Assembly (NCBI GenBank): GCA_002269645.1
Contig: NIVC01003198.1
Coordinates: forward strand, 1 to 62,104
DNA length: 62,104 nt
Source of the DNA: Macrostomum lignano
Lineage: Eukaryota
Reading direction: 5' to 3'
In this document: positions 29,053 to 59,260 of the stretch, piece after piece
How positions within the stretch are numbered: the first letter of the stretch is position 1
Layout of the letters: every line of letters begins with the position of its first letter
The notes under the pieces: model-generated
Database searches by the model: none
The model's input: the letters and a program-made list of their open reading frames with translations, nothing else
Told to the model about the DNA's origin: nothing
Translations under genes and position numbers: made by a program

Positions 29053-31937
29053 ATGAGCCTGCCCTACTTATACCTCGTTGAATTTGAATGCGACAGACGA
29101 CTGAGCATACTCACGGAAGACAACGTACTAACAAATGCTCGAGATGTACTTGTTTCGCCAGGTATGTTATAGTTCCCTTGATATCGACATGACCATTCTA
29201 ACATTTACCAGTGTCTAAATGTACAGTAATCTGCTATTTCAGCATCTGATGAGCATCCCATTGACGTCTTTTACCAAGATACAACATATCGCGCTTTCTG
29301 TCGCGGCATCTGTGAGTGCTTCTAGAATTCATTTATTTTAGTTTAGTTTAGATCGGAAGTCTTTATAAAAATTAAAACTATTTTTCCAGCCACAGAAAGA
29401 CCACAACTAGTGACCATAATGAAACGGTTGTGCATGGAAAAGGAAGCTAATCGAATTGCTCACAAGAACGGATCACAAGTGAATCGTTCGAGTTTCGGGC
29501 GGATATCTGTGCCGTCACATCGTTTTGGAACAACATCATCCGATGAGACAGCAGATGAAACCGATGTGCATTCTGCTGGGAGCCCATTTGAAGCGCCGGT
29601 TTCTAGGAAGCCTGCACCTGAATCCAGACCTATGCTTCCAGATCCGTTGCTCCTGTTACGCAATCAACAGCACAGCGCGTGTTTGCCGCCACATGTTTCG
29701 TGCAGTTCTGGCCCATCTGATTTCCAAAATATCATGCACAACGGAGGAGTTGTCCCACAAACCTCCAACAGTGGTGATTCTCTCCTCCGAGAACTAACTG
29801 GAGACCTGCGGGTCACGCCACATTCGTCGGTTTCAAGCGGGAATCATCCGGTTCGGGATCATCAGGGCCGTTTCCATTTGGAGACACAAACAATAGTGAG
29901 CAAGTGGGAGAAAGACTTCCGTTCCGCTGGATTGGACCTTTACTCCAACAGAGGTAATGCAAATCGAAATCGTGCTGTAGAAACTTCATGATAAAGTACT
30001 CGTACATGCGTTGTTCTTGTTCGTGCAGGAATAGTGCATCTACTCGCCCACGTGGTGCGCGACATCAAGATGGTTTCAAAGAACCAGTCGACCACCTCAT
30101 CTGACGCCGCTGAGTCTCCGTCACTGGTACATATAGATGATTCACTTGGTGACCTTCCGATGAAAAATGTATCTGAATACCAGAGCTTCTGTCGGAAGCT
30201 ACAAGAATCTGGTTTCCGGAACGCTATAGTAAGTCAATTCATGTCTCAATACTTTTATCAAATGTTTATGGGCGCAAAATTGCTTCATATTTCATGAGTT
30301 TAACATCATTTTAAATAAATATCACGAAATATTATGCTGCATGCATGAAAAAGTTCTTTGGTACGGTAAATATAAAAATGACTGATGTTGCAGGTGACTC
30401 AAACGCGCGTCCTTTTACAGATTTCGAAGCTACGACGCCTTGGTGGCAACAATGCTGAAGCCCACACAGCAAGAATAATGGACTTTCTGCTGTCAAGAAA
30501 GTTTCAACAGGCTTTCAATCGGTCTGGTAGGGATTATTCGCAAGCACGAAAAACAAGTGGCAATAAGCTATCATTTGCCAAAACCTTGGAACCGATCGTC
30601 ATTTGTAAGTTAATGTTATGAACTAATGCTCCTGCCAAACCTTTGCTTAGGAATTTATACGTATCATTTCCAAATGTACTTCGTATATTTATATTTACCC
30701 TTTAATGTACCACTAATGTGCACTACTAATATATTTACAGGGGCGTCACCAACGGGGGGGACAGGGGGGACGTGTCCCCTCCAGTAAAATATCTGGGGGG
30801 GGGCATGCCAATGCTTTGTCCCCCACCCCCACCTTGTGGCCCGTTATTAATTTTTGCTGCATGGTGACAAAATAGCACCTGCGGAGCTAAAATGAGTGCC
30901 TGCAGTGCTAAAATGAGTGTCTGCAGTGCTAAAATGAGTGCCTGTGGCGCTAAAATAAGTGCCTAAGGCGCTAAAATGAGTGCCTAAGGCGCTAAAATGA
31001 GTACCTGCGGAGCTAAAATGAGTGCCTGCAGTGCTAAAATGAGTGTCTGCAGTGCTAAAATGAGTGCCTGTGGCGCTAAAATAAGTGCCTAAGGCGCTAA
31101 AATGAGTGCCTGCGGAGCTAAAATGAGTGCCTGCAGTGCTAAAATGAGTGCCTGCAGCGCTAAAATGAGTGCCTGTGGCGCTAAAATAAGTGCCTAAGGC
31201 GCTAAAATGAGTGCCTGCGGAGCTAAAATGAGTGCCTGCAGTGCTAAAATGAGTGCTTGCAGTGCTAAAATGAGTGCCTGTGGCGCTAAAATAAGTGCCT
31301 AAGGCGCTAAAATGAGTGCCTGTGGCGCTAAAATAAGTGCCTGCAGTGCTAAAATGAGTGTCTGCAGTGCTAAAATGAGTGCCTGTGGCGCTAAAATAAG
31401 TGCCTAAGGCGCTAAAATGAGTGCCTGCGGAGCTAAAATGAGTGCCTGCAGTGCTAAAATGAGTGTCTGCAGTGCTAAAATGAGTGCCTGTGGCGCTAAA
31501 ATAAGTGTCTGCGGCGCTAAAATGAGTGCCTGTGGCGCTAAAATAAGTGTCTGCGGCGCTAAAATGAGTGCCTGCGGAGCTAAAATGAGTGCCTGCAGTG
31601 CTAAAATTAGTGCTGACAACACCGATTCTGAAAATAATGTACATGTAGGCATTTCGTCGTGTACATGTGCATATAGAATTCTTGGCTTTGTCCCCCCCAC
31701 CATAAAATCCATGGCGACGCCTCTGTCTATTTACCTGTAATTGTATTTCCATGCAGTTAAAACGATGTCACAAAAAGTACTCGCGTGCCTACGTGTAAAA
31801 TGCAGTGAATTTATTTGCTTTCAGTGGCCGTAACCAAGGCGTTTCCGCAAGCTTCTGAGGAGCGAATCACTCAAAAGATTAAGCGAATGCTGAAAGATTC
31901 AAAAGTGAGGGCCACGTCAAAGCGACATGAGGAGTGA
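29053..31937 (+). CDS. Second gene of the CMC element (TnpA-like accessory protein, DUF4806/BEN-like C-terminus), 6 coding exons
   Basis: Exons 29053-29161, 29243-29311, 29390-29953, 30029-30228, 30421-30604 and 31825-31937 all have GT-AG sites and compatible phases. Starts MSLPYLYLVEFECDRRLSIL; C-terminal LRRLGG...ARIMDFLLS...AVTKAFPQASEERITQKIKRMLKDSK. Confidence 0.75.
30738..31725. mobile_element. hAT-like MITE in the last intron of the CMC second gene
   Basis: TIR caggggcgtcacca / tggcgacgcctctg. 8-bp TSD tatattta/tctattta (7 of 8 match). Confidence 0.8.
30878..31612. repeat. 21-bp minisatellite, ~35 copies, inside the MITE
   Basis: Unit (c/t)ctgcngngctaaaat(g/a)agtg with variants. Confidence 0.95.
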
Positions 31938-35750: not shown

Positions 35751-36616
35751 AGAAATTTTCTTCAGGAGGGATAGGCCGTCCCTACGTAGAACTTTTCTTC
35801 AGGAGGGATAGGCCGCCCCTACATAGAACTTTTCTTCAGGAGGGATAGGCCGCCCCTACATAGAAATTTTCTTCAGGAGGGATAGGCCGCCCCTACATAG
35901 AAATTTTCTTCAGGAGGGATAGGCCGCCCCTACATAGAAATTTTCTTCAGGAGGGATAGGCCGCCCCTACATAGAAATTTTCTTCAGGAGGAATAGGCCG
36001 CCCCTACATAGAAATTTTCTTCAGGAGGAATAGGCCGCCCCTACATAGAAATTTTCTTCAGGAGAGATAGGCCGCCCCTACATAGAAATTTTCTTCAGGA
36101 GGGATAGGCCGCCCCTACATAGAAATTTTCTTCAGGAGGGATAGGCCGCCCCTACGTAGAACTTTTCTTCAGGAGGGATAGGCCGCCCCTACATAGAAAT
36201 TTTCTTCAGGAGGGATAGGCCGTCCCTACGTAGAACTTTTCTTCAGGAAGGATAGGCCGCCCCTACATAGAAATTTTCTTCAGGAGGAATAGGCCGCCCC
36301 TACATAGAAATTTTCTTCAGGAGAGATAGGCCGCCCCTACATAGAAATTTTCTTCAGGAGGGATAGGCCGCCCCTACATAGAAATTTTCTTCAGGAGGGA
36401 TAGGCCGCCCCTACATAGAAATTTTCTTCAGGAGAGATAGGCCGCCCCTACATAGAAATTTTCTTCAGGAGGGATAGGCCGCCCCTACATAGAAATTTTC
36501 TTCAGGAGGGATAGGCCGCCCCTACGTAGAACTTTTCTTCAGGAGGGATAGGCCGCCCCTACATAGAAATTTTCTTCAGGAGGGATAGGCCGTCCCTACG
36601 TAGAAATTTTCTTCAG
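35751..36616. repeat. 37-bp minisatellite, ~23 copies
   Basis: Unit agaaattttcttcaggagggataggccgcccctacat, head to tail with no spacers. Confidence 0.97.
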
Positions 36617-36744
36617 AGAGAATAAGCCACCTCTATGGAGAAAAACAGACTTCAAAAAACATTTTTAGACTTTTCGGGAGGTGCAACGCCCGGATAGCCC
36701 CCTCTCTGTCGGGCTTGATGTTTCCTGTTTCTTTCTTCGGGTGG

Positions 36745-38258: not shown

Positions 38259-41081
38259 ATGGCCGGTGTCGAGTGTCACTCAGGCTGGTTGCCTGAAGTC
38301 AATTGCGACTGTCGAGAGATCGAGAGAATTTTGCAAGAGCTACAAAATACAAACAATACATGGATGAAAGGTTTCTGCCAGCTTGCTATAGCCCACCTGT
38401 ACACTCTACCTGGCTTCTGCAATTTGACTGAAGCATGGAAGGCTCTGAATTCCGCCAGTCAGCCAGACGAAGAGGTAGAACATAACTTATTTAACCTACC
38501 GACCATTGACATTCGATTTCTTGCCACAGCAATGAAACTAAGGCTTGAGAAAATGCAGTTAGGACACCCATCTAAGCACGAAGATTTAAAGAATGAATTA
38601 ACGACTTTATGGGCAGCTCAGGACGAGTCGGTGAAGGCAACTTGCTTGGTTGCCAAAGGCTGGACGATGCACTGGTTTGCAGTCGGACCGCAGCGAGACG
38701 AAGTTTTGAAATTGTGCCACAAAGCATTAAAGGATGCTCAAGAAAAATTAGCCACTATACCTGATGATGCTGGTCAATTGAGGCATGTCAAATTTCTCTG
38801 TCTGTTTGAGCTGGCTTGTACTTACTTCCAACAGCGAGATGATCACCATAAAATTCTTCAGGAAGAGCTTGACCTGTGGACTACTACCAAAATGTTATAT
38901 GATGAAAACAAATGGAATCACCCGCTGTTTGAGCTTGACTTTTACAGGGCCGTCGCTTCCATTCCGAAACACTTTGATGACTGCAGAACTTTCGCCGATG
39001 AGAAGTATTGTGAAATCATGAATAAGTCTAGCTTGTTGAATCAACTCTTTGAAGCTTATTGCGCTCTTCCGGAAATCTACGACGTGCTGAAGAAACAAAA
39101 AAATGGCAAAGATCTGGCAGAGGATTTTAGAACTAAAATAGGTAAATTGCTGGAAGAGGGAACCAATTTCAACGAATGCGAGATGCATAAAAGATTTTTG
39201 CGTCGAAGAATCGAGTCAACTGAATCAAAGACTGCAATCGACTTGCTCAAAAGTGAAGAGAACAAATGGAAGAACGAGTACTGGTTTGCCAATAGACTCA
39301 TCGTGCTAGAATTATTGGTAGATGATTCACTGGTTGAAGATTTCATGCAACGGTTCGAGTCTCTCTGTACAAACTTTCCATTAATGGCACCGGAAATGCG
39401 CTTAGAAAAAGGCATATTTCTGTTAAAGTGCGGCAGCGTCGAAGAAGGAATGCACAGCCTCACCTGGGCAATGAATGACTATCTGCATCCTCCGCTAAAC
39501 TTTAAGCCTTACTACTCTAGCAAGCTAAAGGATGTAGAGTCGTTCTTGAAGGATTCTGAGCGTGATTTGTATCTGATTTGGATTGAAAGTCAGTTTAAAA
39601 CTGATTTTAAGACTTATCACTTCGATGACTCCATTCGAAGGTACCGGACTGAGCTCACAAGGAAAGATCTGACGAACAAACATCGCCATTTCATCAGTGA
39701 GCACATCGGAAGGCTGCTGATGAAGAAGTCGCAATTTGAAGAGGCGGAGCAAAAGTTCAAGTCTCTGCCTGACGCACTTGAGCACAAAAACGCAATGATT
39801 GCTGACTCCCTCTTGTGTCAGGCGGAGAGCTTGTCGAGCGGTGATGACGTCACAGAAGTTTGCAAGGCCAAGCTACAGGAGTATAAAGCACAGCCAGATA
39901 ATGCAGTTCACACAACCAGCATCGGGATGCGGCTGTACCTGCTGAACGAGTGTGCAAAGCTAGGCTGCAGAGACGCCATTCATGAGGCTCTGCTTCTGCT
40001 GGAGGACATCCGGAAGCAGAGTGGCGGAGGTCACTTGTTGCAGCCAGCTCCAAACCATTTGTTCCTGCACAGCAGTCGCGTCTACGTGTTCTGCTCCCGG
40101 CTGCTTCAGCTGAGAGAGCAGGGATTCCATATCGAGCGAAGAAAAAGCTTTTTGGACTCTGGCGGTGACCAGATGGGTGACATGCTGGACAAAGTAGAGC
40201 AAATCTTGGCCACTGAGTTGTATCCAAGAAGAATTCGACTGAAAATGACACAGCTGGGCTTGAAGTATGAATCAGTAGAGGAAATGCTTCAGAGTCCCGA
40301 GGCTGAGCGCAGCATTTGGCACACGCTGGAGGAGTCCCGAAAAGCACTCGATAGCTTCTGGACTCAATTCGTCTCTAAAGTAGAGAAGCAGGAAGCTGTC
40401 TCTGAGTCGAAGAATGTTCCCAGATATTACCCATTTGCCCGCCGTGATTCGAAAAGCAGCACTGAAAGCTTTTCAAACCTTTTCAAAAACAATTGGAGCG
40501 ATCAAGCAAAACTGTTTACTTCACTACTTCAAAGCATGAAAAGCACTGTTGATTGCCTCACCCAGGCTGAAGAGAATGGAGTTGAACTTGATGCATGCGT
40601 GAGTTCTCTGGAAAATATTAAAAAAGCGAGGTTAAAAGATGAAGTATCAGATGATCAGCTAAACGATTTCAAACAGCAGCTGGAGAAGCTCAAGAAATTT
40701 CGCAACACTGCAAAAAGTTCCGCAAGTAGTAGTCAGTCAAAGCAAGCAGTCTCAATCGACAAGCTTAGAAAGTCAAGTGAGAAATTTATCGAAATGCTAC
40801 AGAAACCATTCCCACTCGCATTTCGAGGGAATGACGAAGTCTGTAAATGGATGATCCGGAAAGAAAAAGCCATTGATTCCAACCACGGTTGTTGGCACGT
40901 ACACTGGTGCAACGTAGCAAACTCAGATAAGCACGATGAGCAGGTTAATCTTGCCAGATTCAACCAAGAAATCAAAGAAAGATTTGATCAGAAGAAGAGT
41001 GGGCCAATTGATGTTCTGGCTTTGGCTCATTGCGCTGCGGAATTCGCTGAAGAGGCCAGGCTCGTTCTAGAAGAGTACACG
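38259..41081 (+). CDS. Gene A exon 1 (941 codons): IFIT-like TPR N-terminus plus HEPN-like region
   Basis: Uninterrupted ORF. The gtaag donor at 41082 sits at the same position (KYT/EYT) as in gene B. Domain calls rest on motif recall. Confidence 0.9.
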
Positions 41082-42142
41082 GTAAGTTTTTCTTAATTCC
41101 TTTTTTAAGAATCAAGAGAAACTATTTTTAATTGGACATTTTAAAATGGAGATCATCGAACAAAGATTATTCAAATGCTGTTTTCAAGCTCTTTTCGATA
41201 GTGTAGCAGGTGTAATTTTACTTATTTGTTCGATCTCGCAATTTCCACTAAATACCACCAAGTTGTAGCAGATTTATTTGTTCTGCCTAATTGAATCCCT
41301 CCGTTTGTCACTAAGTTATAACTCTTTCCTAGGAAATTTCCTGGTTCACTAGATTTCTTTGAAATCTCGTGGTAGCGATGAGTGCCCGAGCGGTAAGACA
41401 CTGTTCTAAATTGCTAAATTAAATCCAAAATTACAGCGTTCCCGGGGATCAAGGGTGTCCAGCGGCAAGCCTTAATACCTAATATTTGTCTGTCTTCTAA
41501 TGCCTAATAATTTAATGAATCTTATGACCTTCTTAATACCCCTTGAACCTGTACGGCTTTATCTCTACTTCTGGGTCTGTACGACCTTTATTGCCTGTAC
41601 GGCCTTTTCCCTACTTCTGGTATAAGAAATGAATAAGCAAAGATCATCTCTCAGCAAAAATTTCCTTTATCAAAAGAGGTAAGCTAGGAAGGAACAAACT
41701 AGAGCTTGTTATGTTATGTTATAAGAAACGAGACCAAATGGCTTGCTAAGTTGTGTCGACAGCTCTTGACTCAATCGATAAGTAAGCGAGGTCTTTTATT
41801 AGTTAATTTGCAAGTACGTACATTTAGAAAGTACAGTGCATCGCGTAGATGTACATAGAGCGCTCAATGCTAACACAACACCTCCCTACCATAGAATGGG
41901 AAATATAAAAATATTCGAAAGAAAAAAACCTTATTCGATCACGACATCTAACAAAAACGATTAAAACTAACGAAGCAATCGATAATAATCGTCGAACTTG
42001 AAAAACAAGATTAGGGGAATAAAAAAACAAAAATCTAAATTCTTAAATCAAAATACTTCATCTTAAGCTTTACGAGTTATTAAGCAAAAATCAATTAAAC
42101 CTCTTAGTTAAATCAAAGACTGGCATTTACATTTATACTTAT

Positions 42143-45100
42143 TTAAAAACTGTCCTGATACCTCATCGGCTTCTTGATGAGTCGCCACTTGGCTGTGCGA
42201 TATTCGATCTGATCAGATGCAGAGGCCGGCTGCGCTGAGGCCGGCTGCGCTGAGGCCGGCTGCGCTGAGGCCGGCTGCGCTGAGGCCGGCTGCGCTGAGG
42301 CCGGCTCCGCTGAGGCCGGCTGCGCTGAGGCCGGCTGCGCTGAGGCCGGCTGCGCTGAGGCCGGCTGCGCTGAGGCCGGCTGCGCTGAGGCCGGCTGCGC
42401 TGAGGCCGGCTGCGCTGAGGCCGGCTGCGCTGAGGCCGGCTGCGCTGAGGCCGGCTGCGCTGAGGCCGGCTGCGCTGAGGCCGGCTGCGCTGAGGCCGGC
42501 TGCGCTGAGGCCGGCTGCGCTGAGGCCGGCTGCGCTGAGGCCGGCTGCGCTGAGGCCGGCTGCGCTGAGGCCGGCTGCGCTGAGGCCGGCTGCGCTGAGG
42601 CCGGCTGCGCTGAGGCCGGCTGCGCTGAGGCCGGCTGCGCTGAGGCCGGCTGCGCTGAGGCCGGCTGCGCTGAGGCCGGCTGCGCTGAGGCCGGCTGCGC
42701 TGAGGCCGGCTGCGCTGATTCGTCGAGATTTTGATGTACATCTAGTTCTTGGTGATATTCGTCAAAAGGAACTCCAATTTTCCGTAGTCTGAGAAATCGT
42801 GTGTTCCGTCTGAGAAGCTGACCTGTCTCCGTGCGGACGAAAAAAGATCTTCTGGAGTCGCCCACCTCACTGTCGACCTCAGCCGCCATCCAGTCTCGGC
42901 GACCACGCTGAAGCCACACAGGGTCGCCAACGTTCAGTTGATGAAGCGGGCGAGCACCGCGATTGTAGAGTTGTGCCGCTCGGTTGCGCTGACTCTCGAA
43001 AGCCTCAATACTAGCTTGAATGTGGGTCTCTTTAGGACGAAGATCTTGGAAAGTCGCTGGCAGATCACACCGCAGTTTTCTTCCGAATGCCATCTCAGCA
43101 GGACTCGGAAAGCCGCTTCCAATCGGTGTGTTTCGATAGTGCAACATGGCCATTTCAAAGCTTTGCCCAGTCTCGTGGCACTTCTTGATCATGTTCTTGG
43201 CTGTCTGCACGTACCGCTCGGCTTTCCCATTAGACTGCGGGTAGGTCGAACTGGAGGTCCTGTGCTTTACTTTAAAGATCGATAGCATTAGCTGGAACTC
43301 GCGAGACGTGAATTGTGGACCACCATCACTGATGAATTTCTCCGGGACTCCCAAGTTGTGAAAGTGCTCGCGGAGAATTTGCACGACAGCTGATGTCGTG
43401 GTTGACCGCAGTCGGTTAATGCTCATCCAGTGACTGTAGAAGTCTACGTAGAGCAAATAGGTTGCACCAGAGAACTAAAAAAGATCCGCTGAGCATACTT
43501 GAAACGGAAAATCCGGGAATATCCACCGACATTAGTGTCTCCTTTGACTGTGTCTTCATGTTTTTTTGACACGACTCACATTGGCCTACTGTGCGCTCGA
43601 TGCAGTTGCGCATGCCAGGCCAATAAAAATAATCTTTCGCCTTTAGGTCCATTTTGACTATGCCTGGATGGCCGGCGTGTAAAATGTTGAGAACGCTTTT
43701 TCTTGAGTTTCCTATAGGTACGTAGATTCGATATTTAAGACAGAGCAGGCCTGCTACCTCGGTCAGATCATGCCGAACGTCCCAGAAAACCTTTAAGTCT
43801 TCAGACAGGCTCGATCGACGCTCCGGCCACCCATCTCGGATCACATCCAGCAGCCGCATGCTTGTCGCATCCGATGATGTTTCAGTGCGTATCATGTCGA
43901 GAATTTCAGCGTCACCACTGAAGCAGCGCTCCACTGAAAGGACCTGCCATCTAGAGCTTCTTGAAGCTGCACTGCCAAGTAGTCCGTCGGCCCGTATGCT
44001 CGGCTCAGAGTGTCGGCCACGTACAACTCCTTTCCTGGTGTGTACTTGACCCGGATGTCATACGGTTGCAGCTGTAATAATAGGCGCTGAATTCTGGGAG
44101 TAGTGTCACAGAGCGCCTTTTTGAAGATTGCTTCCAGTGGCTTATGATCACTCTGTTCTTGAACTGTGCGGCCCCACAGGTATCGATGAAACTTTTTGCA
44201 GCCGTATAAAATAGCTAGCAGTTCTTTTTCGATTTGTGCGTATGCTTTTTGAGCGTCTGTCATGGCTGACGAGGCAAAATCTACCGGTCGGTCGTCTTGA
44301 AGTAGAACAGCTCCGATGCCACTCTTGCTTGCATCCACTGAGACAACCACCGGCTTGCTGACATCAAATGTTGCTAGAACGCGCTCAGAGCAGAGTTCAG
44401 TGATGATGGAGTCGTACGCCTTGTCATGCTGGTTCAGCCAGCTCCACATAACGTCCTTTTTTAGTAGATGTCGCAGTGGCTCTGCAGTCGAAGAAAGGTG
44501 TGGGCAGAACTTAGCAAGATACGTTACACAACCCAAAAATCGTCTCAGCTGTTCTCGCTTAGCTGTTATGCTCTCAAAATCATTCGGCCGAGTCATTTCT
44601 TTGATTGCCTTAACTTTTCCTGGGTCTGCTCTTAAACCCATTCGATCCAAGGATATCGCCTAAGTAGTTCAGCTCTGTTAAGCCAACTCTCATCTTCAGT
44701 GGGTTCAATGTGACATTTGCACGGCTGCACTGCTCAAGAAGGTCACGGACGGCTTGATCATGCTCTTCGACAGTTTGACCCCACACGATAATATCGTCGA
44801 AAAAATTCTTAGCATTTTTAAGTGATTTGTGACATTTTCCTCCATACGCTTCTGGAACACCTCGAGAATTGAGCTGAGTCCATACGGAACACGTTTCCAG
44901 CGGTAACGGCCACACGGTGTGTGAAAAGTGGTCAGAAACGAGCTTTATTTGTCCAGCTTGAGTTGATGAAAACTCTCATTTGCGTCAAATGAGCTGTACA
45001 TTACAGCTCCAGCTGTTGCTATTCGAACCTCCGCTGTCGGTATCGGGTGGTATTCTCTAATTATGAATAGGTTCAGATAGGTCGGGTCGAGACACAGTCT

Positions 45101-46580
45101 CATTGATATATGGCGACATACTATGGCGACATTCGAGACCCATTGTGTTGGCTCATCAACCCGAACGATGGTGCCATCTTTCTCTAGTCGTTCAAGCTCG
45201 CACTTTAGAGGCTGGTATGCTGCAAATGGAACCTTTCGAGGTGGCTGAACCTTTGGAACAGCGCTATCGCTTAGCCGAATCGTATAAGGTTGACTCATAC
45301 AGCCTACACCGTTAAAAACTTTGGCGTAACTAGTTTTCAGTTGGCCTGGAGTGAGCTGTGATGGCTTTGTGACCTTAGCGAAAGTCTTTGGACTTTGTTG
45401 GATACTAAATAACTTTTTGATTAATTCTAGGTCTTTCAGTGCAGACTTGTAGCCAATTATTGGCGTCGAGTTCTCGCCTACTACCACTAGCTGAATTCGG
45501 AGATTCTTTTTGCAGGGTGATGACACAGTCAAGTGTGTGACACCTACATCATCCAGCTGCTGCTTATTGTACGTCATCAGTGTCCATGAGGTTGGCTCGA
45601 TCTGAGCCTTTGGAGCCAGCTGAGTTAGGTGCCTCAATGGTATGACGTTGACGTCTGCCCCTGTGTCGACCTTGAACAGCAGCTTTCTGCCAGTCTCTTT
45701 AACAGTCAAACTCACCATCATTGGGGAATTGCTAGTTGGTGGATTATCCTGGCCGCAGTTTGGCTTCTCCAGCGTCATGCTCGATGCCGACATAGGAACT
45801 AGAGACTCGTCTTCTTCAACCAGCTCATTAATCTTCTTGGACGAGCGGCACATTCATTCTTTCGACCACAGGTGCTGCATTGCTTTCCATAGGCCGGACA
45901 CTTGCGTCGTTCGTGTTGGTAACCACAGTAACCGCAGCTGCGTCCCGGTGGCTTGAATTGGCTGGCTGACCTTGAACCGCGTCCACTGATGAAGATGTCG
46001 CACTGAGTGGAATTCGACTTGGCTGTGCGGCTGTGCTAAGGCTCGAGCTTGTCGCTTTGATGTCTCAGAAGCTCGTCCGATTTGAATCGCACGGTCCAGT
46101 GTGAGCTTTTCCTCCCTCAACAGTCTTTTTCGAAATGCTGGGTCGTTGCTCCCGATGACAATTTAGTCTCTAATGACGCTGTTGACGATATTCTCCCGAT
46201 TTGCTGGCTTTTCGTAGTTGCATCGTTTTATTAACTGACGCAGAGAGCTAACAAACTGATGGAATTCCTCTGCATCACCTTGGACTCTAGTCCTGAAATG
46301 ATAGCGCTCAAATGTCTCCTTAGAGTTTGGCTCACAATATTCTTGAAATTTTGCGACTACCTGCTCGTATGTCTTTACTTCCTCTGCTGCAAATGTTGAA
46401 TAGATGTCTTGCCCTTCGGCTCCTAATGCAGTAAGAAGTGTTGCAATTTTCACTTCGTCGTCCTCGCTCGTCTTCTTGGTAGCCTTCATTTAGAGATCAA
46501 ACGCCATTTTCCATCTTGGCCAATTCTCCGCACGGTTTGTATCAAAGGCGATTCGGTTCTGGAGGCCTCAGACCATCCAT
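42143..46580 (-). pseudogene. gag-pol: Gypsy gag-pol, frameshifted
   Basis: VDTGADVNVIP (protease), FFDDIIVWG (RT), VDASKSGIGAVLLQ and YAQIEKELLA (RNase H), HAGHPG...CESC (integrase zinc finger), SDGGPQF and PQSNGKAER (integrase core). Split over several frames. Confidence 0.92.
42226..42718 (-). repeat. 15-bp tandem repeat, ~33 copies, encoding (PASAQ)n in the integrase tail
   Basis: Unit ccggctgcgctgagg on the + strand, in frame in ORF 42143-43456. Confidence 0.97.
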
Positions 46581-46589
46581 GCTTATTTT

Positions 46590-48038
46590 ACAAGTAGTAT
46601 GAAGACGCACACGTCTTTTTGCCACCAGTGAACGGGCTTCTTTTTAGACGTGGGTCTTCATACTACTTGATAAACCTAGTTTTGTACCGATAAAAAAGAA
46701 CTGAGAATCTCAAGAAAAATTTAAATCTCTACTTATCCCATTTTTCTCTTTGTCTGTTCTGTTTTTCTCCTCTCTAATCTCTCTCTAGTCTCCCCTCTCC
46801 TCTCGCTTTTCTCTCGCCTTGCCTTATCTTTATCTCCTCTTTTCTCTTCTCTATCTATTCTCTTTCATTTCCTCTCTTATCTGTCCCGCAACCATGAACT
46901 GGAATCTTCTACAATAGGCCCTCGATCTAAAAAAATTGTCTAAAGTCTCTAGAGCGTAGCAGGGTTATACAACTCCATTTAAGCTGGTTGTTTCGGCGCA
47001 AGATCCTCTAGCATCAGCTTAAGTGCTTGGAAAGCCAGGCCAGTTTTGTGGGACCTAATACTCATACTGACTGATACTATCAATCAGATAGTACACTAAA
47101 CTGACATAAGATACGGGGTTGCAAAAAAAGCTATAAATAAAGTTATTCCAAAACTGTACATACCTACTTAATAAGCCGCGTATCGCCTGACCTTTTAGCC
47201 TGGGGGGGGGATGTACACATAGTGACTTGGAGCAGCGAAATCAGACGGCGGCAATATAGACCAATATAGTACAGCAACTATGCTATAGAAATTCGAAATC
47301 GGCTTATTCGCACCATGTTCTCAAAATTATAATGAGCAATAATGCGAAAGTCATGTGATTTTTTGAAAAATCGATTTTTTCGGCACTGCAGAATCGTAGG
47401 GAAACAAAACTTTAGACACTTGTAGATTTTTGCATTGCGCATCCAACTGCACTGCTTTGAAGCCCAAACTCAAAAAGCTTCGTAGGAAAAATTGGCGAAA
47501 TAATAAAATGAAGGTCATTTTTTACCCAAAAAACCCACCAAAACTGCATAAAGACGCCGAAATAAATTAAAGTGCCATATACCATTTTGTAGGAAATTTA
47601 GTTTTACAACTTTGATCCTTAGATGTCGAAGCCGTATCTCGTAAGGTGTACCAGAATTTTGAGATCTCCCAGAAGCACTTTTGAAAAAATCGTCTTTCCA
47701 CTTAATTTACGGCTTAGTAATAAAATCTCTGCACTTAAAAGTATATTCATTCGATAGATTTAAAAGTTTTCTATCGATCAACACCTCACTCAACTCAATC
47801 GGTGCAGTGGTTGCAAAACAGGAGCATTTTTTGGCGAAAAAACGTGAAATTTAAAAATGCTATGTAAGAGTCTAACTTATTTACTCGTAAATACTTTCTA
47901 GCCCATGTCGGCCTTCGGCCGCCATGGGTAGAAATTATTCACTCGCCCTCGGCCCCTAACGGGGCCTCGGGTTCTTTCGCTCTCGCCCGACGCCGCCTTC
48001 GGCGGCGCCGGGCTCGGCTCGTTCACTGGTGGAACTAG
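46590..48038. mobile_element. Composite X-Y repeat inserted between the Gypsy PBS and gag ATG
   Basis: Same as 1455-2870 but retains the GC hairpin cgccgccttcggcggcg. Confidence 0.65.
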
Positions 48039-48355
48039 TTGCAACTTAAGCTTGCGACGCCATGCTATGTTATAAGAAACGAGACCAAATGGCTTGCTAA
48101 GTTGTGTCGACAGCTCTTGATTCAATGGATAAGTAAGCGAGGTCTTTTATTAGTTAATTTGCAAGTACCTACATTTAGAAAGTACAGTGCATCGCGCAGA
48201 TGTACATAGAGCGCTCAATGCTAACAAAACACCCAAGTTAGATGGTTTTATTTTCATGCCAGGCGAAGCTTTTATATAATAAACAAAGGGGGTGTGGGGT
48301 GCATCGTAATTGACGGGGACAACTCAAAACTAAATTAGATAAAAATTTTAACAAA

Positions 48356-50567
48356 ACAAGTAGTATGAAGACGCACACGTCTTTTTGCCACCAGTGAACG
48401 GGCTTCTTTTTAGACGTGGGTCTTCATACTACTTGATAAACCTAGTTTTGTACCGATGAAAAAGAACTTTGAGAAGCTCAATAAAAATGTAAATCTCTAC
48501 TTCTCCCATTTTCTCTCTTTGTCTGTTCTGTTTCTCTCCACTCTAATCTCTCTCTAGTCTCCCCTCTCCTCTCCTCGCTTCTAGCTCTCGTTTTATCTCT
48601 TATCTTCTCTTTAGTCTTATCTCTTCTCTATTCTCTTTCTCTCTCATCTGACCCGCAGCCATGAGCTGGAATCGAGTCTTCCATAATAGGCTTTAGAAGG
48701 CCTCGATATAAAAAAATTTCTAATGACTCCAGAGCGTAGCAGGGTTATATTTTGCAAAGAAAGCTATAAATAAAGTCTTTCCAAAACACTGTACATACCT
48801 ACTTCAGAAGCCGTATCGCCTGACTTTTTAGTCGGGGGGAGGATTGTACACGTAGTGACTTGGATCTTGCGCCCGACAAACTTTGTACTGGGCTTGCAAT
48901 TCAAATGTGCCTGTTAAAGAGCTAAATTTAATACGAAATTCTAATCACGTGACGCCCGTTTATCGATCTAATTTCCCTTGGTCTGTGTGCGAGTCAAATG
49001 AAGCTCTATTACACGCCCTCCAAACCAAGCCGCCAAGCCCTCTCGCGTTGCCACAACCCCACTTGGAAGGGACGGGTGTGTACATTGTATGTACGATTAT
49101 TCCTTCCTTTCCTTTCCTTTCTAACCAGCTTAACTCAGCCCAACGCCAAAGCCATGCAAGCAATCGCATGCAAATGCAAATTATGCAAAGCGGTATGCGG
49201 CTTAATCTGATGAATTTTGGTGCAAAAAATGCATTTTTACCTCAAAAGAACATCGAATGGTTATGAAACTCAAGAAATCTGTTAAATTAGCTGTATGGAA
49301 TACTGTGCATTGGTTTCAGTGCAAAATTCTTACCATTTCCAGTTTAAATAGCCCCGAAACTAACATAAAAGTAAAAAGTCAAGTTTTCAGTTTTTTATCG
49401 ATAATTTTTTACCCAATGAACCGAATCTCTAGAAATTGCACACAAATATGCCTCATTATGTGGGAAATCAGATTTCATAAAAATCTTGTCGTCCTATTGC
49501 GTTATTTTGCCTGATTTCAAGCAAAATATAAAAAAATCACTACTCTGATCGATTTCCAATCACTTTTGACACATGAGCACTTGTTGCAGACACTCAAAAA
49601 CTTGGTAAATTTTAGCCAGACATTAGTACAACTAATTGCAGTGTCCGCATTTGATTTACCATTCTTTTAAAAATTTAATCACCCTTTTTTCTGGCACCCA
49701 ATCAGCCAAAAATCACAAATTATCGATTTCTGATCGATTTTTCAACCCGAAAGCAGCGAAATCAGACGGCGGCAATTTAAACCAATATAGTACAGCAACT
49801 ATGCTATAGAAATTCGAAGTCGGATTATTCGCACCATGTTCTCAAAATTATAATGAGCAATAATGCGAAAGTCATGTAATTTTTTGAAAAATCGATTTTT
49901 GTCAATTTTCTCAGCACTGCAGAAGCGTAGGAAAACAAAGCTTTAGACACTTGTAGATATTTGCATTGCGCATCCAACTGCACTGCTTTGAAGCCGAAAC
50001 TCAAAAAGCTTCGTAGGAAAAAGTGGGGAAATAATAAAATGAGGGTCATTTTTTTACCCAAAAAACCCACCAAAACTACATAAAGATACCAAAATAAATC
50101 AAAGCGCCATATACCATTTTGTAGGAAATTTAGTTTTACAACTTTGATCCTCAGATGTCGAAGCTGTATCTCGTAAGGTGTACCAGAATTTTGAGATCTC
50201 CTAGAAGCACTTTTGAAAAAATCGTCTTTCCAGTTAATTTACGGCTCATTTAAAAAATCTCTGCATTTAAAAGTACATTCATTCGATAGATCTAAAAGTT
50301 TTCTATCGATCGACACCTCACTCAACTCAATCGGTGCAGTGGTTGCAAAACAGGAGCATTTTTTAGCAAAAAAACGTGAAACTTCAAAATGCATAAGAGT
50401 CTAACTTATTTACTCGTAAATACTTTCTAGCCCATGTCGGCCTTCGGCCGCCATGGGTAGAAATTATTCACTCGCCCTCGGCCCCTGGCGGGGCCTCGGG
50501 TTCTCTCGCTCTCGCCCGACGCCGCCTTCGGCGGCGCCGGGCTCGGCTCGTTCACTGGTGGAACTAG
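48356..50567. mobile_element. Composite X-Y repeat, copy b, in duplication copy 2
   Basis: Nearly identical to 3188-5398. Confidence 0.6.
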
Positions 50568-50934
50568 GATTTATAACAAATAATACCGTATAAAACAAAG
50601 GATTTCTGATTGCTTGCTAAATTAGATTCGAATGTAGCTACTTATAGTAATACAATGGGGATTGGCCAGACCTTACATCAATAGCAAAAGCAGACGTGTG
50701 AAATATTTTGCTAAGCTTTGACGTTAGCATAAACTTAAATTCACTTAGAAGCTCGGCTGAAAATAGAAAATACGGACTCTATTCCACTTTTTCTATTTTA
50801 AAATTTTAAAGAACCGAAAGTAGTGATGTAAAAAAATTGCTGACATTTGCAAACATTTAATTTTCCGACAGATCTATAAAACTCGGTTTACAACAAATAT
50901 ACGCTTGTATCATAAAACTAAATTCGATTTGCAG

Positions 50935-51571
50935 TACCCAGAGGTAATCATTCCAACGAAGCCAGACGCCATCGGCGAAAACTTCGAGTGGAGCCTGGTC
51001 TGCTACTCGTGTGCTCAGCCGAACGACGTATTGCGCAGCAGATGGCACCGCTTGCAGAATGAATGTGCCAACTGTGACAAGTGCATTCTGCTGGTCAGAG
51101 AGAAGGCCAGTGTGGCACCAAGTGACGTTTGGCAGCGTGTCCGACCCAGACCAAGGAAACTCGTCAAGCTGGACATGTGCAGGAGATACAGCGATATAGA
51201 ATCCTGCAACGGTTGCAATCGTTCTGAATGCGACTTTGCCCATGGAGACGCGGAGCTGCGGCAGTGGGAGCTGGAGAGAATCGGCAAATTCTCCTTCAAC
51301 AAGCTGCTGGAGTCCAATCGATCAGCTGGGTCAGAACTGCCGCTGATTCTCTGCGAGCGACCTGCGGTCGAAGGAGGCTCGGAGACCCGAATTTTCTACA
51401 CGGGTCCGGAGTCGCTTCCCGCCAGACTCCCTGCTGGGAAAGCACAAAATTCCTGCTATTCGCTCTGCAACTCTCTACTTGAAGGAACTGAGTGCCAGCA
51501 TCAAGGCATATGCTTCAGTGCTCACTGTGCTGAGGAGGAGCAGCTGTGGAACATCATGCAACAGAAAAGAG
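50935..51571 (+). CDS. Gene A exon 2 (CxxC plus 2 CCCH)
   Basis: Open frame YPEVIIPTKP...EQLWNIMQQKR. Phase 0 matches the exon 1 donor. Confidence 0.88.
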
Positions 51572-51662
51572 GTTAAATCGAGATGCTTACAGAATTCTAA
51601 TCTTTACGTTATAGCTCGTAATATTGAATAACGCTCGTGTTACAATTCATTAACTGTTTTAG

Positions 51663-52295
51663 ATAATTGGCCCGAACATCTGGTTTTAAGAATCGACAAA
51701 ATCGAGCCCGAACTCATTGGCTGGAGCCTCGAATCGAGCTGCGACTACATGTACAAGCTGACCTGCTACAGGTGCTCCGAATCACTGGATCCTCTGAGAA
51801 GCAGATTCAAGCTGAAGGAAACACAGAACTGTGAGCGGTGCGACCAGAGCATCCTGCTGGTCAGATCGAAGAACAATCAAATCAACAAGTGGCAACGCAT
51901 CCGAGACAGACAAGGACATCTGGTCATATGTGATCTCTACCAATCAAACAAATGCAGGCGCTCCGAATGTGACTTCGCTCATGGCGATGTGGAACTGAAG
52001 CTGTGGAAGCTGGAGAGAATCGGCAAGTTGTCCTTCGACAAACTACTGAAGTCCAAACTGCCGCCGATTCTCTGCGAGCGGCCTGCGGTCAAAGGAGGCT
52101 CGGAGCCCCAGATTGTCTACACGGGTCCGGAGCCGCTTCGCGCCAGACTCCCTGTGAAACGTAAAGATTTCCACACTCTCTGCAACTCGCTGTTTCAAAG
52201 AAAAGAGTGCCTACATTACAAGTATAATCGCGGCACTGCTTCTATGCTCACTGTGCTGAGGAAGAGCAGCTGTGGAACATATTGCGAAAGAAAAG
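51663..52295 (+). CDS. Gene A exon 3 (CxxC plus 2 CCCH)
   Basis: Same as 6493-7128 except a -1 and a -2 deletion near the 3' end, within a cluster of 1-bp losses that look like read errors. Confidence 0.8.
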
Positions 52296-52378
52296 GTAAA
52301 TAATCATATTATATGCTATTAGAGTACGTTTTTAACCTTCGCTATTCTCTCTTCGTAAATTAGAACCATGGTTTGGAC

Positions 52379-52731
52379 CATATAGATCTTATATTCCCTA
52401 GATAGGCCACTTTGTATGGCGTAAATAGAGAAAGCGCGACCGCTGTTTTTCGTCACTTGTGCTTTTGTGCTTGTGTTTTTCGTTAAATTTTGAGTTCAGT
52501 AGCTTAGAGACATAGACGCTTTTTTGAGAATTTAATAGAACTTCTCATGAATTGAATAAAAAGCTACTCAATCAAACTATGAATGGTGCATGCACTGCAG
52601 AGACTACGGACGAAATTGAGTTCAGTAGTTGATTTTCGCGCTGTCGCGAGTTGCAAATGTTTTTACATTAGCTTCTATGGCCACATGAGTGGTTAATGAG
52701 TGGCCCATCCTGCGTATATATATGATCTTTG
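52379..52731. mobile_element. hAT-like MITE in intron 3 (copy 2)
   Basis: TSD GTTTGGAC at 52371-52378 and 52732-52739. Confidence 0.85.
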
Positions 52732-53245
52732 GTTTGGACTCATGTTTGATTTGGGTGCGCATTTTAGCAATGTGCATTGTAACACGATATAAATGTGTAA
52801 AAGCGTGCATTAAACGCTAGAAGCGGGCTTAAATGGCTCGTGATCGCGTATTGGCTGGAGTCATTTAATGCACGAGAAATATATATCGTGTTACAATACT
52901 ACTCAATACTTGGTTTTTCTGGCTTAAATGGCTAGGTCACGATTGCGCACTGTGCTCAAAACCAAGTATTGAATCCTATATTCGGCTGTAAATGTTTTGA
53001 TAAGCGGAATTTTCATCTATGGATCATCCTGTCAAATATTGTCTCATTTTGAATTGCAGAATTGTATGCGAAAATTCTATCTTTAGCTATCAGAGATTTA
53101 CTGTGTGCCAACTAAATCATGTTACCCTTCCCATATAATCTGTTTATATATGACGCTGTTTTCTTGGCCTCTACCTACATGTACAAAATGCAATACAGAG
53201 TTACCTCCTCTTACGCTCGTATCTAACACGCTCAATTACATTTAG

Positions 53246-53598
53246 AGAAGTGGCCTCAGGAGCTGCGAGCACTGATCGACCGAATCCAGCCTCAGCCACA
53301 ACCGAGGCAGCAGCAGCAGCAGCAGCAGCAAGAAAGTTTCGGAACTGAACAACATTCCTTCGGAGAATGCGGCGCCCACAGGGCCAGCAACAGCAGATCA
53401 GAGCGGGGCTGCGCTGTAGGTCAAGATGCTCCTTGCTCAACGCAACAGCAATTAGGAACTTGGCGGCCGGCAACATCAAATCGGAGCGGGACTGCACTAT
53501 CTGCCGTAGGTCAGGCTGCTCCTTACCCACCACAACATCAAGGAAGTCGGCAGCCAGCGACATCAGGTCAGCAGAAGGACAAAATTCGCGACAAATAA
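53246..53598 (+). CDS. Gene A exon 4: Q-rich tail
   Basis: Copy of 8098-8450, TAA at 53596-53598. Confidence 0.6.
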
Positions 53599-59235: not shown

Positions 59236-59260
59236 TTGATTGCGGGACCGCGTGTTTTGT

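What the first reader, a model, noticed from the sequence alone, without database searches (positions are those of the whole stretch)
38259..39734. N-terminal ~490 aa carry IFIT signature motifs at IFIT-like spacing
Seen: ECHSGW (A) and ECHSKW (B) near the start, LAIAHLYTLPG ~37 aa later, and CLVAKGWTMHWF 125-127 aa after the first Cys. From recall of vertebrate IFITs: ECHFTW, LLAYVKHLKG and CEKGWALLKFG occur at similar spacing (~125 aa from CH to KGW), the proteins are ~450-490 aa, and nearly the whole coding region is one exon, as here. The match is remote and recognised by eye.
Basis: partly seen in the sequence, partly recalled or inferred. Interest (0 to 1): 0.75.

Follow-up and report, generated by a model that had tools for sequence, protein, structure and literature searches.

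The report
IFIT-like domain in a flatworm gene
The first ~500 amino acids of a 945-codon flatworm (Macrostomum-type) gene are a very distant but real-looking relative of the vertebrate antiviral IFIT proteins, a family reported only from jawed vertebrates, here joined to extra domains and RNA-binding zinc fingers.

Summary
ORF A (38259-41096, +) and its broken paralogue B (15787-18712) carry ECHSGW/ECHSKW, LAIAHLYTLPG and CLVAKGWTMHWF at offsets of 36-38 and 125-127 residues from the Cys, against 38 and 126 in human IFIT1 and IFIT5.

A alone is too diverged to prove anything: Pfam, PDB phmmer and BLASTP are all negative. A does belong to a small family from Macrostomum lignano plus two unidentified ENA eukaryote assemblies. 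Less diverged members start ...SLDQLECHFTW, which is the IFIT signature.

- **Family versus IFIT profile:** 97% probability, E 1.2e-10, colinear, with all three motifs in register.
- **Specificity:** family residues 1-200 match IFIT 1-200 (E 1.5e-9) but not IFIT's other TPRs (E 0.2), and match consensus TPR only weakly.
- **Structure:** a template-free AlphaFold model (pLDDT 80.5) has IFIT5 as its best PDB match (TM about 0.5).

The domain sits inside a protein of about 1,300 aa, with an unknown C-terminal domain and CCCH zinc fingers. Most IFIT RNA-contact residues are not kept in A. An RNA-binding, defence-type role is inferred, not shown.

The parts
38259..41081 (+). Large coding exon of gene A. 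The intact ORF of 945 codons runs on to a stop at 41096. The coding exon most likely ends at the splice donor ACG|GTAAGT, 41081|41082.
   Evidence: ORF list. Donor sequence. Homologue P0001 continues ...EEYT|YPEV... into the CCCH exon.
38259..39818 (+). IFIT-like TPR domain, aa 1-520. All-helical, with about 29 helices in the model.
   Evidence: hhalign of the family against IFIT: 97%, E 1.2e-10 and 93.4%. AlphaFold pLDDT 80.5, pTM 0.73. Foldseek top hit IFIT5 4HOQ, TM 0.47/0.51.
38271..38288 (+). ECHSGW. It aligns to the IFIT 'CHFTW' loop-L1 signature, keeping C, H and W.
   Evidence: Paralogues P0004 and P0018 have the exact ECHFTW.
38382..38414 (+). LAIAHLYTLPG. It aligns to IFIT LLAYVKHLKG, the first TPR helix.
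38643..38678 (+). CLVAKGWTMHWF. It aligns to IFIT C-E-[EK]-G-W-A-L-L-K-[CF]-G. A G134 and W135 align to IFIT5 G145 and W146 (IFIT1 W147). A W139 sits where IFIT has the phosphate-binding Lys.
   Evidence: IFIT residue roles from PMC13197388 and bioRxiv 10.1101/152850.
39819..40820 (+). Middle helical region, aa 521-854. It is conserved in the family (ECL.LGC.D, LFF.S..YE.CA, R..RL..TK, ESR..LD, YYPFA) and resembles nothing known.
   Evidence: Alignment A2. No Pfam, PDB or PADLOC hits. hhalign against IFIT gives E 0.23.
40821..41081 (+). C-terminal conserved domain of about 90 aa and unknown function. Invariant residues are E869, W879, W883, K891, H892, H924 and E931. Motif: REH.I...W..W....N.[DE]KH ... 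AH.AAEFAEE.
   Evidence: This is the part of A that matches best in each of the 11 hits of the 1.84-billion-protein search. No Pfam or PDB match.
50935..52296 (+). Downstream CCCH zinc-finger module, presumed to be the 3' exons of gene A. The acceptor is TTTGCAG|TACCC at 50934|50935. CCCH fingers lie at 51178-51243 and 51466-51525 (C-x8-C-x5-C-x3-H).
   Evidence: tblastn with P0001. Sequence. Pattern scan. UniProt names the homologues 'C3H1-type domain-containing protein'.
42143..45853 (-). LTR-retrotransposon pol remnants (integrase, RT-RNase H, and a protease-region ORF). They lie inside the 9.8-kb gap between exon A and its CCCH module.
   Evidence: Pfam rve and RT_RNaseH hits. ORFs.
15787..18679 (+). 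Paralogue B, the same large exon. It is broken by an in-frame TAA at 16765-16767 and a 4-bp insertion at about 17491-17494. It has the same three motifs and the donor CACG|GTAAGT at 18679|18680.
18907..20277 (+). CCCH zinc-finger module of paralogue B. The acceptor is TTGCAG|TACCC at 18906|18907.

Best explanation
Gene A is an intact member of a lineage-restricted gene family. The family is known from Macrostomum lignano and from two unidentified eukaryote assemblies.

The N-terminal ~500-520 residues of the family are a highly diverged homologue of the vertebrate IFIT TPR clamp. The order of elements matches IFIT:
- an N-terminal cap whose loop carries C-H-x-x-W;
- then TPR helices in the IFIT order, including the G-W helix that in IFITs starts subdomain II and lines the RNA pocket.

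In IFITs the CHFTW loop is reported to pack against helix alpha7. From my memory of the IFIT5 structure, the KGW motif lies on alpha7. If so, conservation of both motifs at a fixed spacing reflects conservation of that staple.

Unlike IFITs, the domain is not a stand-alone protein. It is followed in the same 2.8-kb exon by a helical region of about 330 aa and a conserved domain of about 90 aa of unknown function. After an intron come CCCH zinc fingers. In other paralogues, RGG repeats take that place.

Shown: the motifs, family membership, specific profile similarity to the IFIT N-terminus, and IFIT5 as the best structural match.

Inferred: the protein binds RNA, with the clamp plus a CCCH or RGG tail, and acts as an interferon-independent defence or RNA-surveillance factor against RNA viruses or retroelements. 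Its ligand specificity probably differs from IFIT1 and IFIT5, because most of their phosphate- and cap-contacting residues are replaced in A.
For: Motifs and spacing match IFIT.

A's N-terminal 520 aa are homologous to those of P0004, P0018, P0007, P0016 and P0012: hhalign 99.8%, E 8e-28, colinear over 3-519.

Those relatives carry the exact IFIT signature. P0018 has SLDQLECHFTW against human IFIT1 SLEQLRCHFTW, 9 of 11 identical. P0004 has LEELECHFTW against IFIT5 LLELECHFTW, 9 of 10.

Family against IFIT profiles:
- 97.0%, E 1.2e-10, 283 columns, family 4-382 to IFIT 14-310
- 93.4%, E 2.4e-7
- the subfamily without A, B or P0001: 95%, E 3.6e-8

Controls:
- Reversed family 16.3 and shuffles at most 50, against 63.6 for the real alignment.
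- Out-of-register alternative alignments score at most 38.
- Family 1-200 against IFIT 1-200 gives E 1.5e-9; against IFIT 201-482 it gives E 0.2.
- Family against consensus TPR gives only 25%, E 7.5e-4.

Structure: the AlphaFold model used no templates and no IFIT sequences in its alignment, and reached pLDDT 80.5. IFIT5 4HOQ ranks first in the PDB with the highest TM, 0.47/0.51. The earlier poor model also ranked IFIT5 and IFIT1 first and second.

CHFTW is described as invariant in all IFITs and as contacting alpha7 (PMC11462223).

RNA link: homologues end in CCCH fingers or in RGG-type repeats (P0004 and P0006).

At the position aligned to IFIT5 R186 (IFIT1 R187), 7 of 8 family members have R or K. 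This is read from the alignments.

Immune-gene-like dynamics:
- a tandem and segmental array;
- a pseudogenised neighbour;
- the IFIT-like half about 45% identical between A and B while the 3' half is 95-100% identical. This resembles the partial gene conversion described for IFIT1 and IFIT1B (PMC4887208).
Against: - A by itself shows no significant in-register similarity to IFIT. BLASTP's best hit is out of register, E 0.011. A alone against the IFIT profile gives E 3e-3, off register. The A/B/P0001 subfamily is not significant.
- HMMER finds no IFIT with A, with the 5-sequence profile A1, or with profile A3. Pfam finds nothing at all in A.
- Only about the first 200 residues carry a specific sequence signal. 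Residues 201-520 match either IFIT half only weakly, E 3e-4 to 1e-3.
- In the Foldseek list, generic TPR solenoids follow IFIT5 within a factor of 2-10 in E-value. The other IFIT entries are not in the top 50. TM of about 0.5 with rmsd 10 A is borderline.
- A has CHSGW, not CHFTW.
- Aligned equivalents of IFIT1 R38 and K151 are E20 and W139 in A, and R187 aligns to Q191.
- IFITs are reported to be absent from invertebrates (PMC3688568). That makes deep homology a strong claim.
- There are no expression, RNA-binding or infection data.
Confidence: 0.68

Rival explanations
1. This is a generic, fast-evolving TPR or helical-repeat protein. Its resemblance to IFIT is chance or convergence: short motifs plus the shared TPR periodicity. 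There is no specific common ancestry with IFITs.
For: - No HMMER, Pfam or BLAST support for A.
- The A subfamily alone is not significant against IFIT.
- HH-type methods can over-score repeat proteins.
- Foldseek E-values of other TPR solenoids are close to that of IFIT5.
- The literature places the origin of IFIT in jawed vertebrates and warns that invertebrate TPR proteins give spurious IFIT BLAST hits (PMC3688568).
Against: - The strongest signal lies in the non-TPR N-terminal cap. Family 1-70 alone gives E 2.2e-5. Relatives match 9 of 11 and 9 of 10 residues around CHFTW.
- Family 1-200 matches IFIT 1-200 at E 1.5e-9, but real IFIT TPRs 201-482 only at E 0.2 and consensus TPR only at 25%.
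- Shuffled, reversed and off-register controls all score far lower.
- IFIT5 or IFIT1 is the first PDB hit for two independent models.
Confidence: 0.2
2. The domain is homologous to IFIT, but the clamp no longer binds RNA or never did. It would serve as a protein-protein scaffold, as many TPR domains do. Any RNA contact would be made only by the CCCH or RGG tails. The gene could be a housekeeping RNA-metabolism factor rather than a defence gene.
For: - Family-invariant residues in the N-terminal domain are almost all hydrophobic or structural. Only K133 and H482 are polar invariants.
- IFIT1 R38 and K151 equivalents are not basic in A.
- The basic stretch KRFLRRR in A is not conserved in the P0004 and P0007 subfamilies.
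- An extra conserved C-terminal domain of unknown role dominates family conservation.
Against: - An R or K aligned with IFIT R186/R187 is kept in 7 of 8 members.
- A and B keep the Trp aligned with the IFIT1 cap-binding W147.
- Two different RNA-binding tails have been joined to the same core.
- The IFIT-like half is the fastest-diverging part between paralogues. That is more typical of a ligand-recognition surface under diversifying pressure than of a housekeeping scaffold.
Confidence: 0.3

Closest known systems
Vertebrate IFIT proteins (IFIT1, IFIT1B, IFIT2, IFIT3, IFIT5). Structures include IFIT5 3ZGQ and 4HOQ, and IFIT1 5W5H and 5UDI.
   Same: - An N-terminal C-H-x-x-W loop, exactly CHFTW in paralogues P0004 and P0018.
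- The same order and spacing of the first TPR helices, including the G-W helix.
- Colinear profile alignment (97%, E 1.2e-10).
- IFIT5 is the best PDB structural match.
- The domain is about 500 aa and all-helical.
- It is encoded without introns.
- The genes sit in tandem arrays with partial gene conversion and pseudogenes.
   Different: - It is a domain of a protein of at least 945 aa, about 1,300 aa with the CCCH exons, not a stand-alone protein of about 480 aa.
- It is followed by an unrelated helical region and a novel conserved C-terminal domain.
- A has CHSGW.
- Most RNA 5'-end contact residues (IFIT1 R38 and K151; R187 in A) are not conserved.
- It is found in a flatworm with no interferon system, whereas IFITs are described only from jawed vertebrates.
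- Sequence identity is about 15%, and only the first ~200 residues give a specific signal.
Generic TPR solenoid proteins (consensus CTPR, OGT TPR domain, APC/C subunits Cdc16/23/27, SKI3, TTC7, TONSL)
   Same: An all-alpha helix-turn-helix repeat architecture. Relatives such as P0004 have Pfam TPR_2, TPR_8 and TPR_14 hits at aa 308-495. Foldseek lists these proteins just behind IFIT5.
   Different: A itself has no Pfam TPR hit even at E<=10. The family matches consensus TPR only weakly (25%, E 7.5e-4, one repeat at aa 452-502). TM-scores to these solenoids are lower, at most 0.43 against 0.51.
CCCH zinc-finger antiviral and RNA-binding proteins (for example ZAP/ZC3HAV1, PARP12). This comparison is from general knowledge and was not tested here.
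   Same: Presence of C-x8-C-x5-C-x3-H type fingers in the downstream exons. Possible RNA-targeting defence logic.
   Different: No detectable sequence similarity beyond the finger pattern. Pfam zf-CCCH models do not hit. The architecture is different.

Membership tests
[quoted passage not shown] | The pentapeptide CHFTW, invariant in IFITs, in loop L1 near the N-terminus (PMC11462223) | tested here: inconclusive
   A has CHSGW and B has CHSKW, so C, H and W are kept at the aligned columns. Family members P0004 and P0018 have the exact ECHFTW with IFIT-like flanks. P0007 has CHFKW and P0012 has CPFSW. The feature is met by the family and only 3 of 5 in A.
[quoted passage not shown] | Significant, colinear sequence similarity to IFIT proteins that is specific relative to other TPRs | tested here: met
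   Family profile against IFIT profile: 97.0%, E 1.2e-10 and 93.4%, E 2.4e-7. N-terminal 200 against IFIT N-terminal 200 gives E 1.5e-9; against IFIT C-terminal TPRs it gives E 0.2. This holds only at profile level. A alone and the HMMER searches are negative.
[quoted passage not shown] | A three-subdomain TPR clamp fold enclosing an RNA channel | tested here: inconclusive
   The AlphaFold model of aa 1-520 has pLDDT 80.5. IFIT5 4HOQ is the best PDB hit: E 5.8e-5, TM 0.47/0.51, rmsd 10.3 A.
[quoted passage not shown] | Conserved RNA 5'-end contact residues (IFIT1 R38, W147, K151, R187, R255; PMC13197388 and bioRxiv 10.1101/152850) | tested here: not met
   By the hhalign alignment, W147 aligns to W135 in A and is kept. 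R38 aligns to E20, K151 to W139 and R187 to Q191 in A. R187 aligns to R or K in the 7 other members. R255 lies in a low-confidence part of the alignment.
[quoted passage not shown] | A stand-alone protein of about 450-490 aa made of TPRs only | tested here: not met
   The IFIT-like part is aa 1 to about 520 of a 945-codon exon. That exon is spliced to CCCH exons, and homologue P0001 is 1,346 aa.
[quoted passage not shown] | Interferon or virus inducibility (ISRE-driven ISG) | not testable with these tools
   No expression data were available. Interferon genes are reported only from jawed vertebrates (PMC3688568).
[quoted passage not shown] | Distribution restricted to jawed vertebrates (PMC3688568) | tested here: not met
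   The closest homologues are Macrostomum lignano proteins. The other members come from unidentified ENA eukaryote assemblies.
Canonical TPR repeat proteins (Pfam TPR clan) | Matches to the 34-residue TPR consensus models | tested here: inconclusive
   A has no Pfam family at E<=10. Homologue P0004 has TPR_2, TPR_8 and TPR_14 hits at 308-495, which align to A at about 300-500. Family against consensus TPR gives 25%, E 7.5e-4.
CCCH (C3H1) zinc-finger proteins | C-x7-8-C-x4-5-C-x3-H fingers | tested here: met
   CNSLLEGTECQHQGICFSAH at 51466-51525 and 19441-19500. A looser variant at 51178-51243 and 6009-6074. UniProt labels the homologues C3H1-type. Pfam zf-CCCH models do not score.

The most novel reading that the evidence does not exclude
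The IFIT antiviral RNA-clamp is older than jawed vertebrates and interferon. A protostome (flatworm) lineage would then retain and have expanded an IFIT-type domain with the CHFTW staple. The domain is fused to a novel effector-like C-terminal domain and to RNA-binding CCCH or RGG tails. Such a protein would work as an interferon-independent sensor or restriction factor for non-self RNA, from viruses or retroelements. This would overturn the view that IFITs arose together with interferon.
Probability: 0.3. Interest if true: 0.85.

Novelty: new variant of a known kind. Interest (0 to 1): 0.66.

Why it matters
IFITs are textbook interferon-stimulated antiviral proteins. The literature held here states that they arose with jawed vertebrates and interferon and have no invertebrate counterparts (PMC3688568, PMC11462223).

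A flatworm family that keeps the invariant CHFTW signature and the IFIT N-terminal architecture would do three things:
- It would push the origin of the fold far deeper into animal evolution, or else reveal a striking transfer or convergence.
- It would show the fold in a new multi-domain context.
- It would offer a genetically tractable invertebrate in which to ask what an IFIT-type clamp does without interferon. Macrostomum lignano has RNAi and transgenesis.

The unknown, strongly conserved C-terminal domain is itself a candidate new effector module.

Tried and rejected
- **Pfam.** A, its halves and the CCCH ORF gave nothing at E<=10. Pfam on the C-terminal domain and on P0009 gave nothing.
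- **PADLOC.** Nothing.
- **PDB sequence searches.** With A and with profiles A1, A3 and A2, only spurious weak hits appeared (VPS28, connexin, TetR, LapB) and no IFIT.
- **BLASTP of A against IFIT1.** Only an out-of-register hit, A 359-393 to IFIT1 114-154, E 0.011. This is one TPR resembling another.
- **The search for homologous proteins with family alignment A3.** It returned no hit at all, not even the input sequences. I treated this as a tool limitation, and the search was wasted.
- **First AlphaFold run.** Full length with 5 alignment rows gave pLDDT 44.7. It was too poor to rely on, although Foldseek already ranked IFIT5 and IFIT1 first.
- **HEPN idea for the C-terminal domain.** The N-x-[DE]-K-H motif recalls RNxxxH. 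But the Arg is absent in all members and no profile or PDB support was found, so this is not supported.
- **Contamination or a recent vertebrate origin.** Rejected. The sequence is about 15% identical to IFITs, sits among flatworm-type repeats, and has Macrostomum paralogues.
- **Organisms behind the ENA homologues.** They could not be identified.
Full report
**What is at the locus**

The window is eukaryotic. It holds LTR-retrotransposon pol genes (rve and RT_RNaseH) and transposase-like ORFs. Its only close protein relatives are from the flatworm Macrostomum lignano.

The finding lies in the 5' half of an uninterrupted 945-codon ORF, A (38259-41096, +). A second copy, B (15787-18712), has the same layout but is broken. 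It has an in-frame TAA at 16765-16767, where the homologue has Ser. It also has a 4-bp insertion near 17491-17494.

Both large exons end in a canonical donor, ACG|GTAAGT (41081|41082 in A, 18679|18680 in B). In the UniProt homologue P0001 (A0A1I8J5T1, 1,346 aa) the sequence continues ...EEYT|YPEV... into exons that encode CCCH zinc fingers. These exons lie 0.2 kb downstream of B, with acceptor 18906|18907. They lie 9.8 kb downstream of A, with acceptor 50934|50935, beyond a retroelement.

**Check of the observation**

All three motifs are present in A and B at the stated places. Offsets from the Cys to the second motif and to KGW are 36/127 in A and 38/125 in B. They are 38/126 in human IFIT1 and IFIT5. 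I recalled the two IFIT sequences from memory and verified them as 100% identical to PDB 5W5H and 3ZGQ.

**Is A an IFIT relative? Direct tests on A alone fail**

- Pfam finds nothing at E<=10.
- phmmer and profile searches of the PDB find no IFIT.
- BLASTP against IFIT1 gives only an off-register TPR-to-TPR hit, E 0.011.
- A search of 5.8 billion proteins finds a single homologue, P0001.

**The family context changes the picture**

An exhaustive HMMER search of 1.84 billion representatives found 11 relatives. For every one of them, the best-matching part of A lies in its C-terminal half; in nine of the eleven it falls within roughly the last 150 residues (from about aa 790). Several are full-length (P0004, P0007, P0012, plus cluster members P0018 and P0016).

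Their N-termini read:
- P0004: ...NLEKLEELECHFTWLPED
- P0018: ...SLQSLDQLECHFTWKPDD
- P0007: ...VECHFKWQPE
- P0012...FECPFSWKPD

P0018 SLDQLECHFTW matches human IFIT1 SLEQLRCHFTW at 9 of 11 positions. P0004 LEELECHFTW matches IFIT5 LLELECHFTW at 9 of 10. CHFTW is described as invariant in all IFITs and as the loop L1 that contacts helix alpha7 (PMC11462223).

The N-terminal 520 residues of A, B and P0001 are unambiguously homologous and colinear with those of P0004, P0018, P0007, P0016 and P0012 (hhalign 99.8%, E 8e-28).

**Profile-profile test**

I built an IFIT profile from amniote IFIT5, IFIT1 and IFIT1B sequences (alignment A5).

| Comparison | Probability | E-value | Extent |
|---|---|---|---|
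| 5-sequence family alignment A3 vs A5 (tool hhalign) | 97.0% | 1.2e-10 | 283 columns, family 4-382 to IFIT 14-310 |
| 8 family vs 103 IFIT sequences (my own run) | 93.4% | 2.4e-7 | A 3-196 to IFIT5 15-191 |
| Subfamily without A, B, P0001 vs IFIT | 95% | 3.6e-8 | 6-415 to IFIT5 12-373 |

In these alignments ECHSGW aligns to ECHFTW, LAIAHLYTLPG to LLAYVKHLKG, and AKGWTMHWFAVG to EKGWALLKFGG.

**Controls**

- The reversed family scores 16.3. Column shuffles average 17 (max 28). Shuffles of 7-column blocks average 21 (max 38). Shuffles of 20-column blocks average 36.6 (max 50). The real score is 63.6.
- Alternative, out-of-register alignments to IFIT score at most 38.
- Specificity against genuine TPRs: family residues 1-200 match IFIT 1-200 at E 1.5e-9, but match IFIT 201-482 only at E 0.2.
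- The family matches an 8-repeat consensus TPR only at 25%, E 7.5e-4. IFIT itself matches that consensus at E 2.6e-22.
- The cap region alone, A 1-70, gives E 2.2e-5.
- The C-terminal half of the family, aa 521-945, shows no similarity to IFIT (E 0.23).
- Weak point: residues 201-520 have only weak similarity to either IFIT half, E 3e-4 to 1e-3. Beyond about residue 200 the case rests on colinear extension and on structure.

**Structure**

A first full-length AlphaFold run with a 5-row alignment was poor (pLDDT 44.7). Foldseek nevertheless ranked IFIT5 and IFIT1 first and second.

A second run on aa 1-520 used a 9-row alignment of family members only, with no IFITs and no templates. It gave pLDDT 80.5 and pTM 0.73, all-helical.

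Against 350,542 PDB chains the best hit is full-length human IFIT5, 4HOQ: E 5.8e-5, TM 0.47 by query and 0.51 by target. That is the highest TM in the list. Generic TPR solenoids follow at E 9e-5 to 2e-3 with TM at most 0.43. The margin is modest, and the other IFIT entries are not in the top 50. The structural evidence therefore supports the claim without settling it. I could not access the coordinates, so the proposed basic pocket was not examined.

**Functional residues**

IFIT1 W147 stacks on the cap. R38, K151, R187 and R255 hold the phosphates (PMC13197388; bioRxiv 10.1101/152850). Through the alignment:

| IFIT1 residue | Aligned residue in A | Kept? |
|---|---|---|
| W147 | W135 | yes (A subfamily only) |
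| K151 | W139 | no |
| R38 | E20 | no |
| R187 | Q191 | no in A; the other seven members have R or K |

If the clamp binds RNA, its specificity is unlikely to be that of IFIT1 or IFIT5.

**The rest of the protein**

After the IFIT-like domain comes a family-conserved helical region. It is followed by a domain of about 90 aa with invariant E869, W879, W883, K891, H892, H924 and E931. Its motif is REH.I...W..W....N.[DE]KH...AH.AAEFAEE. This domain is the most conserved part of the family and matches nothing in Pfam, the PDB or PADLOC.

Different paralogues end in different RNA-binding-type tails. P0001, P0002, P0003 and the window genes end in CCCH fingers. P0004 and P0006 end in long RGG-type repeats. 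This is my main reason to infer an RNA-related function.

**Evolutionary behaviour**

A and B are about 45% identical in protein, and about 50% in DNA, up to about 39660. They are then 95-100% identical from about 39813 to 40858, and 82-93% after that. This looks like a conversion tract that begins at the end of the IFIT-like domain, leaving that domain as the diverging part.

The whole A-retroelement-CCCH unit appears to be duplicated again: 1-14502 equals 45127-59666 at 98.7%. Tandem arrays, pseudogenes and partial gene conversion are also features of mammalian IFIT loci (PMC4887208). The parallel is suggestive, not evidential.

**Comparison with what is known, and novelty**

In the literature held here, IFITs are found in jawed vertebrates only. 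Invertebrate TPR proteins that BLAST to IFIT are judged not to be IFITs (PMC3688568). Searches for 'IFIT-like' and for IFIT together with invertebrate taxa turned up no invertebrate IFIT homologue. The Macrostomum proteins are annotated only as 'hypothetical', 'TPR_REGION' or 'C3H1-type domain-containing'.

I therefore rate this as a new variant of a known kind: an IFIT-type domain in a new architecture and a new phylum. It is not an orthodox IFIT. It fails the stand-alone size, the RNA-contact residues, the exact CHFTW (in A) and the taxonomic range.

**Verdict**

- Observation: confirmed.
- Interpretation: supported as remote homology, about 0.7.
- Function as an RNA-binding defence or surveillance factor: an inference, about 0.4.
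- Interest: 0.66.

Noticed in passing
window 1-14502 and 45127-59666: A 14.5-kb segmental duplication at 98.7% identity. It contains retroelement sequence and a CCCH zinc-finger module (5706-7109 and 50875-52296). This implies that the unit 'A exon, retroelement, CCCH exons' is itself tandemly repeated, and that another A-like exon probably lies just upstream of the window.
   Followed up: partly
window 15787-18712 (stop at 16765-16767; 4-bp insertion near 17491-17494): Paralogue B is disrupted by one nonsense codon (TAA where the homologue P0001 has Ser) and one 4-bp insertion. It is probably a pseudogene, unless these are assembly errors.
   Followed up: yes
window about 39740-40900 versus about 17330-18500: A and B are mosaic. 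DNA identity is about 50% in the IFIT-like 5' half and 95-100% in a tract of about 1.1 kb in the 3' half, dropping again to 82-93% at the exon end. This looks like recent gene conversion that starts at the domain boundary.
   Followed up: yes
window 40821-41081 (aa 855-941 of A): A strongly conserved C-terminal domain of about 90 aa with invariant E, W, W, K-H, H and E. It has no match in Pfam, the PDB or PADLOC. In the ENA contig L001 it also occurs as isolated 96-aa ORFs (P0009) next to a full-length gene. It is possibly a new effector or interaction module.
   Followed up: partly
window 42143-45853 (-), repeat at 42217-42792: LTR-retrotransposon pol remnants (integrase rve, RT-RNase H). The integrase ORF carries about 38 tandem copies of the pentapeptide QPASA. 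The element sits in the presumed 9.8-kb intron of gene A.
   Followed up: partly
window 23794-25665 (+): An intact 623-aa ORF with weak Pfam hits to DUF1258 and DUF4218, which are transposase-associated families. It is probably a DNA-transposon gene between the two paralogues.
   Followed up: no
window 30869-31613 and 35751-36643: Two minisatellite arrays, with self-similarity at offsets of about 105 bp and about 74 bp. The first creates a 301-aa repetitive ORF on the minus strand that is unlikely to be a gene.
   Followed up: no
window 5706-7109, 18907-20277 and 50875-52296: Each CCCH module is internally duplicated. Two half-modules, each with a Cys-rich segment plus a CCCH finger followed by LWxLERIGKFSF, are about 50% identical. 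Pfam zf-CCCH models do not recognise them, although the C-x8-C-x5-C-x3-H pattern is exact.
   Followed up: partly
proteins P0004 and P0006 (Macrostomum lignano paralogues): Other family members replace the CCCH tail with long RGG-type repeats (GGSEHFRGRGG... and GGAGGRGRGGSHFDPRGG...). The same core has therefore been joined to a second kind of putative RNA-binding tail.
   Followed up: no
loci L001 (ENA ERZ25074608, 491-kb contig) and L002 (ENA ERZ26859043, 163-kb contig): Full-length family members (P0007 and P0012, single ORFs of 869 and 1,117 aa) occur in two unidentified eukaryotic assemblies. In L001 the gene is clustered with C-terminal-domain fragments. The organisms could not be determined with the tools at hand.
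   Followed up: partly
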